Assembly (NCBI RefSeq): GCF_964204865.1
Contig: NC_135251.1
Coordinates: 24,056,001-24,120,000 of the forward strand
Source: Styela clava
Taxonomy: Eukaryota
DNA: 64,000 nucleotides
Direction: 5' to 3'
In this document: one piece after another, positions 2,591 through 58,633 of the stretch
Layout of the letters: the number at the start of each line of letters is the position of its first letter
How positions within the stretch are numbered: position 1 is the first letter of the stretch
Made by a program: the position numbers and the translations under genes
Notes under the pieces: model-generated
The model's input: the letters and a program-made list of their open reading frames with translations, nothing else
The model's database searches: none
What the model was told of the DNA's origin: nothing

Positions 2591-5500
2591 CTATATATAC
2601 TGATCAACGACAACCTTATTCTTGCAGTCATCAGTACGGCAACGGAAACATGTTTCCATTTTTCTTTGACCTGAGTAAAAAATGATTTATGTCAGCATAG
2701 TAAAAAAAGGGTTTCTGCAACGAATTTCCTTAAAGTTGTATTTCATTTATCTTGTTATTTTGATAGATACGCCATAAAATGAATAAAAGCGAAAATATGT
2801 AAAATTCAGAATTATAATCAGGTCAATTTAAAGTTTTTGAAATAAGAGATAAAAATAACACTAAAGATACTTACGGACGTCCTTCTTCAGCTTTTTGACT
2901 TTAAGAAATGCTTTGCAGTTAAAAGCGTAATTGTCAGAATTCTTTTTCTTCTTGCAATATTCAAAACCTATCAACTTGTCGAAACATACTGCTGCTACTC
3001 CGCCCGCGGTAGTGGACTCATCTCCTGGCGTACTCCTTCCGGACTATAACGATATATATATAATGTAAGCTTTAAATGCAAATAACAACGCTGGTTTGGT
3101 CGAAATCTCTATTACCTAAATTGCATATGACATTCACTAACATCCCCATTTTGCCTTGAATCAGATTGAGCGCTAGCGACCCAAGTTTTTCTATAGTTAT
3201 TATTAATTTAGCATTATCGCTATAGATTACACTTTACTTGTAGTTCTGTCGCAGCTGGATCTGGGAATATATCCAAATCAAAATCTTCGGATTCTGTTTC
3301 GACATTTCCCAAATATCTTGATTCTTTGCCCAACCAGAAATCAGCTAGTTCACCGGCGTTGTATATGCAATAAGCCTGAATAAATTCATATGTTCTATTA
3401 TTCTCAGTCTAATTGTTTTTGAAGTGGGGTTTGTATCTGTCTTGCGTTATAAATCCCTATGTCCTCCGACAATCGAAGCAACTAATGACACCTCCCTTCA
3501 AAAAGTTTATTCCCCGCCGTTCAAATACGCGAGATACACCATTTGAAGGTTTGTTCAAATGATATCGAAGCATTGACAAGCGCTGATATTTGCGGAAATA
3601 TTTTAAAATATAACAATATTTGCGTACCAACCGATAATAATATATTTTTCACGTTGACGTTAAATCTACTCTAACTCAATATATATAATGGGACAAGTGC
3701 AACAAATATCAGACAAGGAAGACATGTGGAACAAGTCTGAGGCAAGAGAGACAATAAGTGTGGAATAAGTGGTATGGCCTTTGTGAGACACCGTTCAAAT
3801 ATTATTTTCAGGCTTTTTGGACGATTTAGCTAATTGGACGATTGTTCCCATCTACGTTTACGAAAATGTTAGGGTGTTTTAACCTCCCTAGTACTTTTGA
3901 TTTCAATTGAGTGTCTTTTAATCTACTGTGGTCATGAGGCAGACGCATTAGCAATATTTCGAAGCGGCGTCAAAAAAATACCGTCACTCCCTGGTACCAT
4001 ACTGCAATGGAATTAAGTCTTTTGGGCTAATAGTAGTTATATTCATGAACTCACAAAATTGGTGATTTCGCAGAGTTGAGCTTCCCACGCAACAAGTTGG
4101 CATGATTTCTCTGGCATAAATTTTCCGTTCTGACAATCGACTCGCGAACTTTTTTCTAATACGTAGTTTGGCTGGCATGCAACATAACATCTTTTGTAAA
4201 AGTCATTATTGATTCCGTCTCGACATTTTGTTTTTTCAAGGTCAGCTCGTGGCCCAAGCATGTTCCTATCACAGAAGTTTACAGCATTCCAGCCTACATT
4301 TGAAAAACAACACATATTTTCAAACTGCAAAACTATTTCCACAATAACATAAATTGCGTTTGTCAACTATTTAATAAAACTGAATATTTCATCGTATATT
4401 TTGATTTTTATAACGGTCCATAAAAACAAACAAATGAAATGCGCTACAATTTACAACAGGAAAATACCAGAGAACTCTGTTGTAGCCTATGTATACGCGA
4501 CCCTTAGCGACGTTGATTATAACTAATGCAACATACTTTGTAGGCATAACTTACTATTATAAGTAGCATTGAATCCTTTGAAATTATTGAATTCGTCGCT
4601 TAGGAATTGAACTATGACAAAATTTGTTTTTGATCGATATTTCATGGTTGCTCCTGTATTTGATCCAAAGAAATATTCACCATCTCCGTCGATGTCTTCT
4701 TCAAAAATCTAATTTGAAAATATAAACTAGGCGATAAATATTGTGCACATGATTTTGTTGTTTATAGCCAAACTTGAAAGATTAAACTTAGCCAAACTTA
4801 TTGAGAACGTTTAACAGATGCAATTGCCAGAAAACCGAGTCAAATTGCAGTAAAAATCGCAGAATATAATGTCATGTCAGTGTATCAACAAACCAATTTT
4901 ATCCTCGACAGCTTTGAAGCTGGCCTCCCTTACTGAGATGCCAGAATCGTAGATGTCCCTTCAAACAAAAGATATTAGAAAAGAGCCTTCCTATTAAAAC
5001 CCATTTAATTACAATAACCTATTTGCTTTGATCAATTGCAAGTGCACCATCCATTTACGTAATTAAAAAATTAAAGTATTATTATGCAACTTTTGTGATT
5101 AATGACCTAATGAACTGAGCAGTTTCAATTTCAGATTCTCAAGAAATCACGAAGTAATATAACGATTCGTATATCGTATTATAATATCGATTAGTTTCCA
5201 AACCATGTTTTCAAACACAAAAAATTTCTGACACGGGAGCGACTGAGAGCGAAAGAAAGTGAGAGGTATAAAGAGAGAAGGTGTCTATTCCAGAGACGCA
5301 CTAAAACTCAAATATTACAGCCTCACTTACCATAATGTAATCGGTCATTTCTCCGCCAGGCTCTCCAACTTGAAAATTGTCAAATTTGATTTCGACTATG
5401 TTACCAGCTTCAACCTCAATTACCCATTCACATAGCATATCTGCTGGATAATTAGCAGGGAACAACGGACTAGTGAAACGTCCCGATGGGGCTGTCATAA

Positions 5501-6158
5501 ATGATTCCCCGCAAATGTCCACTTCAAAATCGAATGGCGAAACATCCAAATTTGCTTCGATGAATGAATCTGAACATAAAAACAAATTAAAAAAAAAATA
5601 ATATAAAAATATTATCAATAGTATTATTCATAACAGTTACACTACATTTCAAGGGATCAGAATATTGGATCAATCATTTTGCGACGGTGACTCCTGGCAG
5701 TTTTGAGCGCAAATTAAATTCATAAATCGTTTTGCTAAAATGTTGTTATCGTCAGTGAACTTTGAGTTTATATTTGTAGTTGCCGGGATTTTGAGGATGT
5801 GGTGTAACTTATCACCAAGAAGCTTTTTGCCGGGTGATGTTGCTGTAATGAGGCCGTCGTGACAATATATTTGTGCAGTGGCGTTTGATTTTCTTTATCG
5901 TATCCGTGTGACAGATATTTTCGTGAATATTTAGTCAAATATTTATTAAATTTAGAAGATTTCGACACGTCCCAAATGAATATCGAACAACTTCCGTATA
6001 CATACTAACAACAAAAAGTCGAAACTAGAAAAAACAAAAAAGGCAGAATACCATATAGAGCCTGAAGCAACTGTATCCGTGATAAATATTAAATTACCTT
6101 GGGCGATCACGTGAGCACAAAAAATAGCTAAGATACATATCCATACATTCAACTCCAT
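2591..6158 (-). CDS. Paralogue A: secreted CUB + sushi/CCP-like + Cys-rich cationic C-terminal domain protein (about 359 aa, 7 exons)
   Basis: Exons 6158-6098, 5569-5331, 4708-4555, 4293-4055, 3375-3238, 3043-2875, 2670-2591, all GT-AG and in frame (1080 nt). Signal peptide MELNVWICILAIFCAHVIAQ. CUB motifs CG..SGRFTSPLFPANYP..CEWVI and SDEFNNFKGFNATY. Sushi-like CYVACQPNYVL...DCQNGKF. polyA signal near 2473-2478. Confidence 0.88.
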
Positions 6159-56900: not shown

Positions 56901-58633
56901 ATTCTAAAACAAGTAAACAAGGCAAAATTGGACGCTGAGAAAATTAAAAACAAAAAAACGGGTCGGACCTCCTGAAGTATGCGCACCAAGATGTCGCAAA
57001 ACTTGAACATATTATGTGTACCAGGTTAGAGTTAGGGTTGTGCGACATCTTGGTGCGCATACTTCAGGAGCACCAAAGGGTCTATTAACTTCTTCCATCT
57101 TTAATCACTGAAAATATGGAATCGATTGGTACATTAGTTACTTTTTAAAACAGTAAAGTATTGCATGTTTAAGATCTCAGTTCCAATGAGGGCCTATGAT
57201 AATCCCAGCTGTTAACAAGAGCCTAACTCTCTTATCCAATATACAAAAGACAGTAAAATGGTAAAAAAATTCCTATTCGTATCATTTTGAACCTCAACCA
57301 ATTTTGATTTAAAGTACATTCAGTTACCTGCTGCTTAGAGACTTTTATGGCGATCGTGTTGCACACATCACGAGCAAATTAGGCGTTTTGGTACTCTCGA
57401 ATTATGTGAACCAAGATGGCGGACCGGAACGTAGTATGTGTATAAATACTACGGGAGTCACTTGGATAGTCCCCGAACTCGTGATAGAACTAAAATATGG
57501 AAAACACATACTAGGTATGTACACATACTACGTTCCGATGTCCGCCATCTTAATTCACATACTCCGGGAGTACCGGCGTTTTAATCCAACATATTATGAT
57601 TTATTCAGTATTGATTTTTGATTTTTGAACTTTTACCAATACATAGTCATTTATGATATCGCCAAGTGGAAATAAACCGCTTCCTAATTCAAAGTCATTG
57701 AACGTTATTTCTATGATGTTTCCAGGTTCAACTTCGATCACCCAATCACAAACTTGATCGCTAAGATATTCCAACGGATAAAACGGACTTGTGAACGATC
57801 CTGATGGTGAAGTCATCAATTTTGGTCCACATATTTCTGATAAAATAAAAATTAAAAAAAGTGACAAAAAGTTCTCGTGGATGGAGTTTACCAGGGCATC
57901 GACTTCCTTCTTAATTTTTGTAAACAATGGCTAAACATCAATAACCTAACGGCGAGGCACTAATAGAGGATTGAACAACTGCTTAGGTGCATTTCGCGCG
58001 AAGACAATTTTTAAAGCATGGTTGCAAACTCCTTATTTCTGGGATTTTTCTATTTATTTGTCAGTTTTCAGTCGTATTTCCAAATGTAAAACATAAATGA
58101 AATAGATCCCCAAAGTTCTTTTAGTTTCCGAGAAGTTGTAGTGAGGAGGCAGTAATCGAAAATTAGCCATGAAAAACTACTATATACTTGGACAAAGTTA
58201 ACTATCAGTATTTTTAAATAGCAGGCGATCAAATAATCTGAATCCAAATGGTGATTGTGAAACATATAAAGCATTTTGTACGCGCAAAAATACTTCAAAA
58301 ATGAGAACCCACAATTTTGCAATGATAATGTGTAAGAATAATGTTTCTGTGCTCAAGAAGAGGGGAAATATTCACTGCAGGCGCCGATTTACAGCACCTT
58401 CGGGTTAGAAAACTGCAAACAATTTTCATTACATTACAAATTTGGCTGGCACATTGCAAGCTGATTTGAATCCTTCAAGATTTTTGCAAGTAATACGAGT
58501 TTGCCATTTTTACAATGAAAATACAGTAAGAGTAAAGAAATTAGAGTTAACGTGACTTACCTTCTGGCGCTGGCACAATGATGCATTGAACAATCGGTAT
58601 ACTGATCAGTAAAAACTTGGCTACACTCAACAT
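53976..58633 (-). CDS. Paralogue F: secreted CUB + sushi-like + Cys-rich cationic domain protein (about 341 aa, 7 exons)
   Basis: Exons 58633-58561, 57836-57637, 56676-56529, 55816-55581, 55165-55025, 54631-54472, 54043-53976, all GT-AG and in frame (1026 nt). Ends CFQCRAIGCTNVVYI*. Confidence 0.88.
56965..57074. mobile_element. Short Merlin-like MITE
   Basis: Hairpin ctcctgaagtatgcgcaccaagatgtcgca. TSD aacgggtc/aaagggtc. Confidence 0.8.
57390..57574. mobile_element. Merlin-like MITE
   Basis: GG...CC termini, TIR ggtactc.cg.a.tatgtgaa..aagatggcggac, perfect 8-bp TSD GGCGTTTT. Confidence 0.85.

What the first reader, a model, noticed from the sequence alone, without database searches (positions are those of the whole stretch)
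2591..58633. Six-member tandem family of secreted CUB-sushi-Cys6 proteins with an unassigned architecture
Seen in sequence: six same-strand paralogues with identical intron phases, each encoding signal peptide, CUB, sushi-like domain, acidic YCxY..ELAxYW..FPD linker and a Cys-rich C-terminal module. The five complete ones end in (V/I/Q)Y(I/L)*. There is no protease and no TM domain. Established knowledge: CUB and CCP modules co-occur in complement C1r/C1s/MASP and in gamete-recognition proteins, usually with EGF and protease domains. Inference: a lineage-specific, diversified recognition/effector family (innate immunity, fertilization or tunic surface). The ORF track misses most exons.
Basis: partly seen in the sequence, partly recalled or inferred. 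Interest (0 to 1): 0.85.

Follow-up and report, generated by a model that had tools for sequence, protein, structure and literature searches.

The report
Sea-squirt secreted CUB-sushi gene cluster
A 56-kb stretch of the sea squirt Styela clava genome holds six intact, anciently duplicated genes and one relic for a secreted protein that joins a CUB domain and a sushi-like domain to an acidic linker and a small, strongly charged six-cysteine tail with no detectable relative; public annotation already predicts the genes, but I found no study of them.

Summary
Six minus-strand paralogues (38-60% identical) each have seven coding exons and the same intron phases (1-0-1-0-0-1). Each encodes signal peptide, full-length CUB (Pfam E 4e-18 to 1e-22), a divergent sushi/CCP domain, two helices, a disordered acidic linker and a tail with cysteine spacing C-x9/10-C-x11/12-C-x20/22-C-x2-C-x4-C.

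All six are complete. The "missing" last exon of the fifth lies 2.8 kb downstream (45607-45519). A seventh, 5'-truncated and frame-broken copy lies at 36851-35413.

Spliced RNA contigs from two studies carry gene 1's junctions, and one contig spans all six. They show no protease or TM exon. Whole-genome profile searches find the family only in this window.

The organism is Styela clava. RefSeq already models at least four of the genes under unrelated "-like" names, and my search found no paper on them. Relatives turned up only in another ascidian (Clavelina lepadiformis, two sushi domains) and in unnamed assemblies.

The last ~130 residues match nothing in Pfam, the PDB or the ESM Atlas. Linker and tail charges are opposite, and both are shifted in paralogue 5.

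Function is untested. My best guess is a secreted adaptor: a recognition head with a polyanion-binding tail masked by the linker. The scan has not reported this family on other DNA.

The parts
2036..6204 (-). Gene 1 (RefSeq LOC120336807; 359 aa). Coding exons 6158-6098, 5569-5331, 4708-4555, 4293-4055, 3375-3238, 3043-2875, 2670-2594; stop at 2593-2591.
   Evidence: Model. All six junctions are present in RNA contigs, and the transcript ends reach 6204 and 2036. The model is 359/359 identical to XP_039260508.2.
9239..13082 (-). Gene 2 (362 aa). Exons 13082-13025, 12856-12582, 12072-11925, 11330-11086, 10796-10659, 10233-10077, 9306-9242.
   Evidence: 351/362 identical to the RefSeq 'enteropeptidase-like' protein P0120 from an earlier assembly.
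16030..21280 (-). Gene 3 (LOC120336829). Exons 21280-21226, 20130-19895, 19525-19357, exon 4 19116-18872 (AT acceptor, 347 aa) or 19152-18872 (upstream AG, 359 aa), 18413-18300, 17156-17000, 16097-16033.
   Evidence: The AT-acceptor version is 347/347 identical to XP_039260537.2.
23537..29319 (-). Gene 4. Exons 29319-29274, 28714-28503, 28011-27837, exon 4 27169-26925 (AT acceptor, 338 aa) or 27187-26925 (upstream AG, 344 aa), 26229-26119, 24906-24747, 23604-23540. Intron 6 holds a 69-nt x 13.4 tandem array at 23635-24559.
   Evidence: Only a 100-aa public fragment (P0033) was seen for this gene.
45516..51767 (-). Gene 5 (338 aa), the paralogue with shifted linker and tail charges. Exons 51767-51710, 50889-50687, 50070-49923, 49514-49285, 48925-48794, 48567-48414, 45607-45519 (intron 6 = 2806 nt).
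   Evidence: The same C-terminus is in the RefSeq isoform P0004. The current RefSeq model P0124 instead ends in the distal exon near 35500.
53976..58633 (-). Gene 6 (341 aa). Exons 58633-58561, 57836-57637, 56676-56529, 55816-55581, 55165-55025, 54631-54472, 54043-53979.
35413..36851 (-). Relic: a copy of gene 5's exons 5-7 only (79-85% aa identity in exons 5 and 6) with frame breaks in exons 6 and 7 and no exons 1-4. It is part of a segmental duplication, 32.7-37.0 kb ~ 43.5-49.2 kb.
   Evidence: Own-genome profile hits, tblastn, blastn.

Best explanation
Shown: this is a tandem array of six intact genes plus one relic in Styela clava. The proteins are 338-362 aa and soluble. They are inferred to be secreted from a hydrophobic N-terminal signal exon and an even count of conserved cysteines (16). 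The domain order is signal peptide, one CUB, one divergent sushi/CCP with extra disulfides, two helices, a disordered linker, and a ~58-67-aa tail with fixed cysteine spacing. The family is old (synonymous sites saturated) and conserved, gene 1 is transcribed, and relatives were detected only in ascidians. Inferred mechanism: a bipartite secreted adaptor. The acidic CUB-CCP head binds a protein or glycan partner. This probably does not use the classical calcium site, because the key Glu is missing. The polybasic, disulfide-stapled tail (net +8 to +14, with K/R clusters) holds the protein on polyanionic surfaces such as sulfated tunic or matrix glycans or microbial envelopes. The acidic linker (net -2 to -10) folds back on the tail and masks it until the tail is engaged or the linker is cut. 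Paralogue 5 fits this pairing: its tail is acidic (-4) and its linker neutral to slightly basic.
For: Gene models, phases and intact frames. RNA junctions and transcript ends. The family is confined to this locus in a 377-Mb genome. CUB is full length, and the CUB-CCP fold resembles C1s CUB2-CCP1 and MAp44. The exon-4 profile also hits many multi-CCP proteins. AlphaFold gives pLDDT ~80 for CUB, ~77 for CCP, <40 for residues 250-292 and 66-81 for the tail. Per-segment charges, and the shifted pair in gene 5. The tail is as conserved as the CUB (45-67% identity), and its Cys spacing is the same in the unnamed relative P0011. Relatives with the same architecture: Clavelina lepadiformis and a Logan assembly.
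Against: There is no binding, localisation or tissue-expression data. The charge-pairing argument rests on one shifted lineage. The calcium-ligand Glu of ligand-binding CUBs is absent in 5 of 6 paralogues, so the head's binding mode is unknown. The tail model is of medium confidence and comes from a 6-7-sequence alignment. A conserved (S/T/A)-G-R at the start of exon 6 in several members fits proteolytic release instead (rival 1).
Confidence: 0.45

Rival explanations
1. Latent pro-protein. The CUB-CCP head and acidic linker act as a pro-region, and cleavage in the disordered linker releases the ~60-aa disulfide-stabilised cationic tail as the active agent (an antimicrobial or signalling peptide). 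This is analogous to anionic-propiece/cationic-peptide precursors, and to PDGF-C/D, where a CUB domain keeps the C-terminal ligand latent.
For: Linker and tail carry opposite charges. The linker is predicted to be disordered. (S/T/A)-G-R is conserved at the start of exon 6 in genes 1-3, P0011 and Clavelina. The tail is highly basic with a fixed Cys pattern.
Against: Genes 5 and 6 have no Arg at that site, and gene 4 has none aligned there, only nearby SR and IR. Gene 5's tail is acidic. A 230-aa, well conserved two-domain 'propiece' would be unusual. The tail has no similarity to PDGF/VEGF or to any known antimicrobial-peptide family.
Confidence: 0.22
2. Complement lectin-pathway decoy or regulator. 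A protease-less CUB-CCP protein would compete with MASP-type proteases for the collagen stalks of MBL, ficolin or C1q-like lectins, as vertebrate MAp44 and MAp19 do.
For: The best fold and sequence matches beyond the CUB alone are C1s CUB2-CCP1, C1r, MASP-1/3 and MAp44. No protease exon is present.
Against: The Glu45-equivalent calcium ligand, needed for the Lys-collagen contact in these CUBs (established knowledge, not tested here), is Gly in 5 of 6 paralogues and Ser in Clavelina. There is no CUB1-EGF dimerisation unit. The C-terminal module has no counterpart in the MASP family.
Confidence: 0.08
3. Gamete or egg-coat recognition proteins (spermadhesin-like CUB proteins, or sperm/vitelline-coat ligands).
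For: These are secreted CUB proteins in a multi-paralogue tandem cluster. CUB proteins act in ascidian and other fertilization systems (PMC9265791).
Against: That review lists no protein with this architecture. The paralogues are old and conserved rather than rapidly evolving. No gonad expression data are available.
Confidence: 0.08
4. Annotation artefact: the exons belong to one longer gene, or most copies are pseudogenes.
For: Only gene 1 was tested with RNA here. Genes 3 and 4 lack a canonical acceptor at the ancestral position.
Against: Gene 1's transcript is complete, with its own 5' and 3' ends. Each copy has its own signal-peptide exon and stop codon, and all frames are open. RefSeq models the genes separately.
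Confidence: 0.03

Closest known systems
C1r/C1s/MASP CUB2-CCP1 unit and the protease-less splice products MAp44 (MAP-1) and MAp19
   Same: A CUB is followed directly by a CCP, with a two-exon CUB flanked by phase-1 introns. These are the best structural and sequence matches (4los, 4lot, 4aqb, 6f1c). MAp44 likewise lacks a protease.
   Different: The family has no CUB1-EGF, no second CCP and no serine protease. The calcium-ligand Glu is replaced by Gly. It is encoded by separate genes rather than a splice variant, and it has a unique linker and six-Cys tail.
PDGF-C / PDGF-D (CUB - hinge - growth-factor domain)
   Same: The order is the same: signal peptide, CUB, flexible hinge, small Cys-rich C-terminal module. 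This suggests latency by an N-terminal CUB (analogy from established knowledge, not tested).
   Different: The tail has no PDGF/VEGF match and is predicted to be partly helical rather than a cystine knot. An extra CCP is present.
PCPE-1/2 (CUB-CUB-linker-NTR) and TSG-6 (Link-CUB)
   Same: These are secreted, non-enzymatic CUB adaptors. The TSG-6 CUB is the top fold hit (TM 0.77 on the target). PCPE carries a basic, heparin-binding C-terminal domain (established knowledge).
   Different: The partner domains differ. The tail here is ~60 aa with its own Cys pattern and is not an NTR.
CSMD / SEZ6 'CUB and sushi' proteins (the names RefSeq gave to some of these genes)
   Same: CUB and sushi occur together.
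   Different: Those are large proteins with alternating repeats and a TM anchor. Here there is one CUB, one CCP and no TM domain.

Membership tests
CUB domain (PF00431) | Full-length match to the CUB profile above the gathering score, and the beta-sandwich fold | tested here: met
   E 4e-18 to 1.2e-22 over profile positions 1-110/110 for genes 1, 2, 3 and 5. All six CUB first-half exons are aligned, and three of them were scanned alone at E 1e-11 to 3e-14. Foldseek match to the TSG-6 CUB: TM 0.77, rmsd 2.9. Only the first CUB disulfide is present.
Calcium-binding CUB subgroup (C1s/MASP/cubilin type) | Acidic triad Glu45-Asp53-Asp98 (C1s numbering) plus Tyr17 | tested here: not met
   The Glu45 position is Gly in genes 1-4 and 6, Asp in gene 5 and P0011, and Ser in Clavelina. 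Asp53 is conserved in all. Asp98 is present except in gene 4 (Gly) and Clavelina (Ala).
Sushi/CCP (PF00084) | Four-Cys CCP pattern, profile match and CCP fold | tested here: met
   Styela proteins score at most 20.1 bits against a cut-off of 20.7, while Clavelina scores 24.8. The exon-4 profile retrieves many multi-CCP proteins with up to 28 matched stretches. The model aligns to C1s CUB2-CCP1. The domain is divergent: Phe replaces the conserved Trp, and there are four extra Cys.
C1r/C1s/MASP proteases | CUB1-EGF-CUB2-CCP1-CCP2-serine protease | tested here: not met
   A complete 1.3-kb transcript has seven exons and no EGF or protease. Pfam finds only CUB and a weak Sushi.
CSMD/SEZ6-type CUB-sushi membrane proteins | Repeated CUB-sushi units and a TM anchor | tested here: not met
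   There is a single CUB and a single CCP. The protein ends in a hydrophilic Cys-rich tail.
Any curated family or solved fold for the C-terminal ~130 residues | Significant profile or fold match | tested here: not met
   Pfam has no meaningful hit at E<=1; only stray sub-threshold matches of 11-14 bits appear. The PDB profile search matches only CUB and CCP. The Atlas gives no usable hit. VIA wide gives a best Z of 3.0 and Foldseek finds nothing. The own-genome profile search finds the tail exon only in this family.

The most novel reading that the evidence does not exclude
The acidic-linker/basic-tail pair is a self-masked effector. Cleavage at the conserved Gly-Arg in the disordered linker would release a new class of ~60-residue, three-disulfide cationic peptide (antimicrobial or cytokine-like). 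The CUB-CCP head would serve as a targeting and latency domain, giving an ascidian counterpart of the CUB-latent PDGF-C/D principle built on an unrelated fold.
Probability: 0.15. Interest if true: 0.65.

Novelty: new variant of a known kind. Interest (0 to 1): 0.4.

Why it matters
CUB-CCP units are the ligand-binding scaffolds of complement proteases and many matrix adaptors. This family attaches such a unit to a conserved C-terminal module that has no detectable relative and, as far as could be detected, occurs only in ascidians. If the tail proves to be a polyanion anchor or a released peptide, it would define a new small disulfide-rich domain. It would also give a handle on tunicate-specific extracellular biology (tunic, immunity or signalling). 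The locus also offers a clean natural test of linker-tail charge co-variation (gene 5), and a candidate GT-AT intron shared by two paralogues.

Tried and rejected
(1) The search for homologous proteins: the full-length query P0003, the family alignment A5 and the tail region of P0128 returned only 2, 3 and 0 proteins. This tool's word index misses the family, so those blanks carry no weight.

(2) ESM Atlas search on residues 232-359 gave no usable hit.

(3) Foldseek and VIA-wide searches with the 175-aa sushi-linker-tail model gave nothing above noise. The tail could not be folded alone because it spans two exons and has no single reference.

(4) Five literature searches, by domain terms, RefSeq product names, and gene or protein accessions, found nothing on this family. 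The ascidian fertilization review has no such protein.

(5) dN/dS per domain is uninformative because synonymous sites are saturated (pS 0.62-0.92).

I replaced it with a coordinate- and phase-based exon picker.

(8) Joined (spliced) models of genes 4 and 6 have no reference. They were assembled only inside local scripts for alignment and statistics and were never sent to a search or fold tool. The searches were done exon by exon (A1-A4, A7) or with public protein ids returned by the searches.

(10) The MASP-decoy reading was considered and down-weighted after the calcium-site check.
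Full report
**What is there**

tblastn with three gene-1 exon ORFs (the two CUB halves and the sushi exon) finds six copies of each on the minus strand (E 1e-9 to 1e-36). tblastx between the six regions shows seven collinear conserved blocks per copy.

I read each block with its flanks. Splice sites were then chosen by phase and by similarity to gene 1. The result is six models of 338-362 aa, each with seven coding exons, intron phases 1-0-1-0-0-1, GT..AG at every intron and no internal stop. 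Coordinates are in 'parts'.

Each copy has its own ATG exon encoding a hydrophobic signal-type N-terminus and its own stop codon. Pairwise identity is 38-60%, and the tree groups the copies as (1,2), (3,4) and (5,6) with 83-90% bootstrap support.

- All six genes are complete. Gene 5's last exon lies 2.8 kb downstream at 45607-45519, and its product ends -RIY. The public protein P0004 has the same ending.
- There is a seventh, partial copy. Whole-genome profile searches with exons 5 and 6 each give a seventh hit. tblastn shows it is a copy of gene 5's exons 5-7 at 36851-35413, with frame breaks and no exons 1-4. It lies in a segmental duplication, 32.7-37.0 kb ~ 43.5-49.2 kb, that also carries a plus-strand multi-TM ORF.
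- Genes 3 and 4 have AT, not AG, at the ancestral exon-4 acceptor. An in-phase AG lies 36 nt (gene 3) and 18 nt (gene 4) upstream. Using it would add a short hydrophobic insert.
- The current RefSeq protein for gene 3 is 347/347 identical to the AT-acceptor version. The earlier RefSeq release had split this gene in two at that point.

**Transcription**

One run search and one read-laying run were allowed, and I used both on gene 1. Contigs from RNA-type runs of two studies carry gene 1's junctions. Between them they show all six at exactly the modelled positions, with CT..AC on the plus strand, which is GT..AG on the minus strand. A third study shows one of the junctions, and a DNA run of the same organism shows none.

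One 1323-nt contig runs from 6204 to 2394 through all seven exons. Another extends the 3' UTR to 2036. So gene 1 is a self-contained ~1.3-1.9-kb mRNA without protease, EGF or TM exons. Genes 2-6 were not tested with reads.

**Organism and public status**

An HMMER search of 1.84 billion representative proteins with the exon-4 profile (A1) returned full-length single-stretch matches. The name look-up places them in Styela clava.

- Gene 1 is XP_039260508, named 'uncharacterized LOC120336807' and later 'membrane frizzled-related protein-like'. It is 359/359 identical to my model.
- Gene 2 is 'enteropeptidase-like'.
- Gene 3 is LOC120336829.
- Gene 5 is 'CUB and sushi domain-containing protein 2-like' or 'neuropilin-1-like'.

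The genes are therefore already predicted, under inconsistent automatic names. Five full-text searches found no paper on them.

Outside S. clava, the same architecture appears in three places:

- Clavelina lepadiformis (404 aa, with two sushi-like domains);
- an N-terminally truncated 306-aa protein from an unnamed Logan assembly;
- two exon-level fragments.

Of the 119 hits, only these carry the linker and tail motifs. The rest are ordinary multi-CCP proteins.

In the 377-Mb S. clava genome, the exon-4, exon-5 and exon-6 profiles hit only this window. The six CUB exons stand 17 or more orders of magnitude above the next CUB in the genome.

**Domains**

- CUB: full length, at E 4e-18 to 1.2e-22. 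Only the first disulfide is present.
- Ca2+ site: against cubilin and C1r, the position of the calcium-ligand Glu is Gly in five paralogues, Asp in gene 5 and Ser in Clavelina. The two Asp ligands are mostly kept. The classical calcium-binding CUB signature is therefore not met.
- Exon 4: a divergent CCP. It is sub-threshold in Pfam for Styela (20.1 against 20.7 bits) and above threshold in Clavelina. It is clearly CCP by profile hits and by the fold match to C1s CUB2-CCP1 and MAp44. It has Phe in place of the conserved Trp, and extra cysteines.
- Helices and linker: two helices follow the CCP, then a 40-residue segment with pLDDT below 40.
- Tail: pLDDT 66-81, predicted as short strands plus two helices. 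Its Cys spacing, C-x9/10-C-x11/12-C-x20/22-C-x2-C-x4-C, is fixed in Styela and in P0011.

The last ~130 residues have no meaningful Pfam match even at E<=1. They also have no PDB sequence match, no Atlas look-alike and no structural neighbour (best VIA Z 3.0; Foldseek none). The model is only of medium confidence, and the tail could not be folded alone, so this is absence of a detected match, not proof of a new fold.

**Charge and evolution**

| Segment | Net charge, five paralogues | Gene 5 |
|---|---|---|
| CUB | -5 to -19 (all six) | within that range |
| Linker | -2 to -10 | 0 to +2 |
| Tail | +8 to +14 | -4 to -5 |

The five basic tails carry K/R clusters. P0011 and Clavelina follow the acidic-linker/basic-tail rule.

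Synonymous differences are saturated between the pairs compared (pS 0.62-0.92), while amino-acid identity in CUB, CCP and tail stays at 45-68%. The linker is the least conserved segment. These are old duplicates under constraint, not a rapidly diversifying array.

**Interpretation**

The shown facts are a secreted, non-enzymatic CUB-CCP protein family with a private C-terminal module. Function is inferred only.

I favour a bipartite adaptor, at about 45%. In this model a recognition head is tethered by a polybasic, disulfide-stapled tail to polyanionic matrix or cell surfaces, and the acidic linker masks the tail.

The main rival, at about 22%, is a latent pro-protein that releases the tail. 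A (S/T/A)-Gly-Arg conserved at the start of exon 6 in several members, inside the disordered linker, fits this reading. Genes 5 and 6 have no Arg at that site, and gene 4 has none aligned there.

A MAp44-like complement decoy is disfavoured by the missing Glu and the missing CUB1-EGF. A gamete-recognition role has no support beyond domain type.

**Limits**

- The search for homologous proteins was nearly blind to this family.
- Tissue of expression is unknown because run metadata are coded.
- Spliced models without a public id (genes 4 and 6) were joined only inside local scripts and never sent to search or fold tools.

Noticed in passing
window 19116/19152 (gene 3) and 27169/27187 (gene 4): Intron 3 of the sister paralogues 3 and 4 ends in AT where the other four copies have AG. 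RefSeq's current gene-3 protein uses this GT-AT junction, and an in-phase AG lies 36 or 18 nt upstream. This is either a rare non-canonical intron shared by two genes or a shifted acceptor adding a hydrophobic insert.
   Followed up: partly
window 34182-35201 (+) and 44535-45362 (+): Two copies of an intronless multi-TM ORF lie in the two arms of the segmental duplication, just beyond the last exon of gene 5 and of its relic. One is 339 aa; the other is 275 aa as an ORF and looks N-terminally truncated or broken. They have no Pfam hit. ESM Atlas features match chordate clusters auto-named 'Serpentine receptor class gamma' (score 0.96).
   Followed up: partly
window 35413-35500 versus 45519-45607: Gene 5 has two candidate last exons. 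The proximal one is intact. The distal one, in the relic, is frame-shifted in this assembly but is the one used by the current RefSeq model (P0124). An earlier assembly had both intact, as isoforms X1 and X2.
   Followed up: partly
window 23635-24559: A 69-nt tandem array (13.4 copies, 91% matches) lies inside intron 6 of gene 4 and ends 31 nt before the last exon. Both strands read as long repetitive ORFs.
   Followed up: partly
window 37347-39382: Degenerate retroelement-like ORFs, one with a weak CCHC zinc knuckle, lie immediately 5' of the relic. They may mark the breakpoint that truncated it.
   Followed up: partly
window 61697-63844 (-): An intronless 715-aa ORF has an N-terminal CCCH zinc finger and a weak, sub-threshold RNB-domain match.
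   Followed up: no
window 1600-2200: A high-copy repeat lies at the 3' end of gene 1's long UTR: depth is up to ~28,000 in the DNA run against ~60 in flanking sequence. RNA contigs break here.
   Followed up: no
window 5697-5765 and 58419-58487: A short block inside intron 1 is conserved between genes 1 and 6 (tblastx). It may be a regulatory element or a repeat.
   Followed up: no
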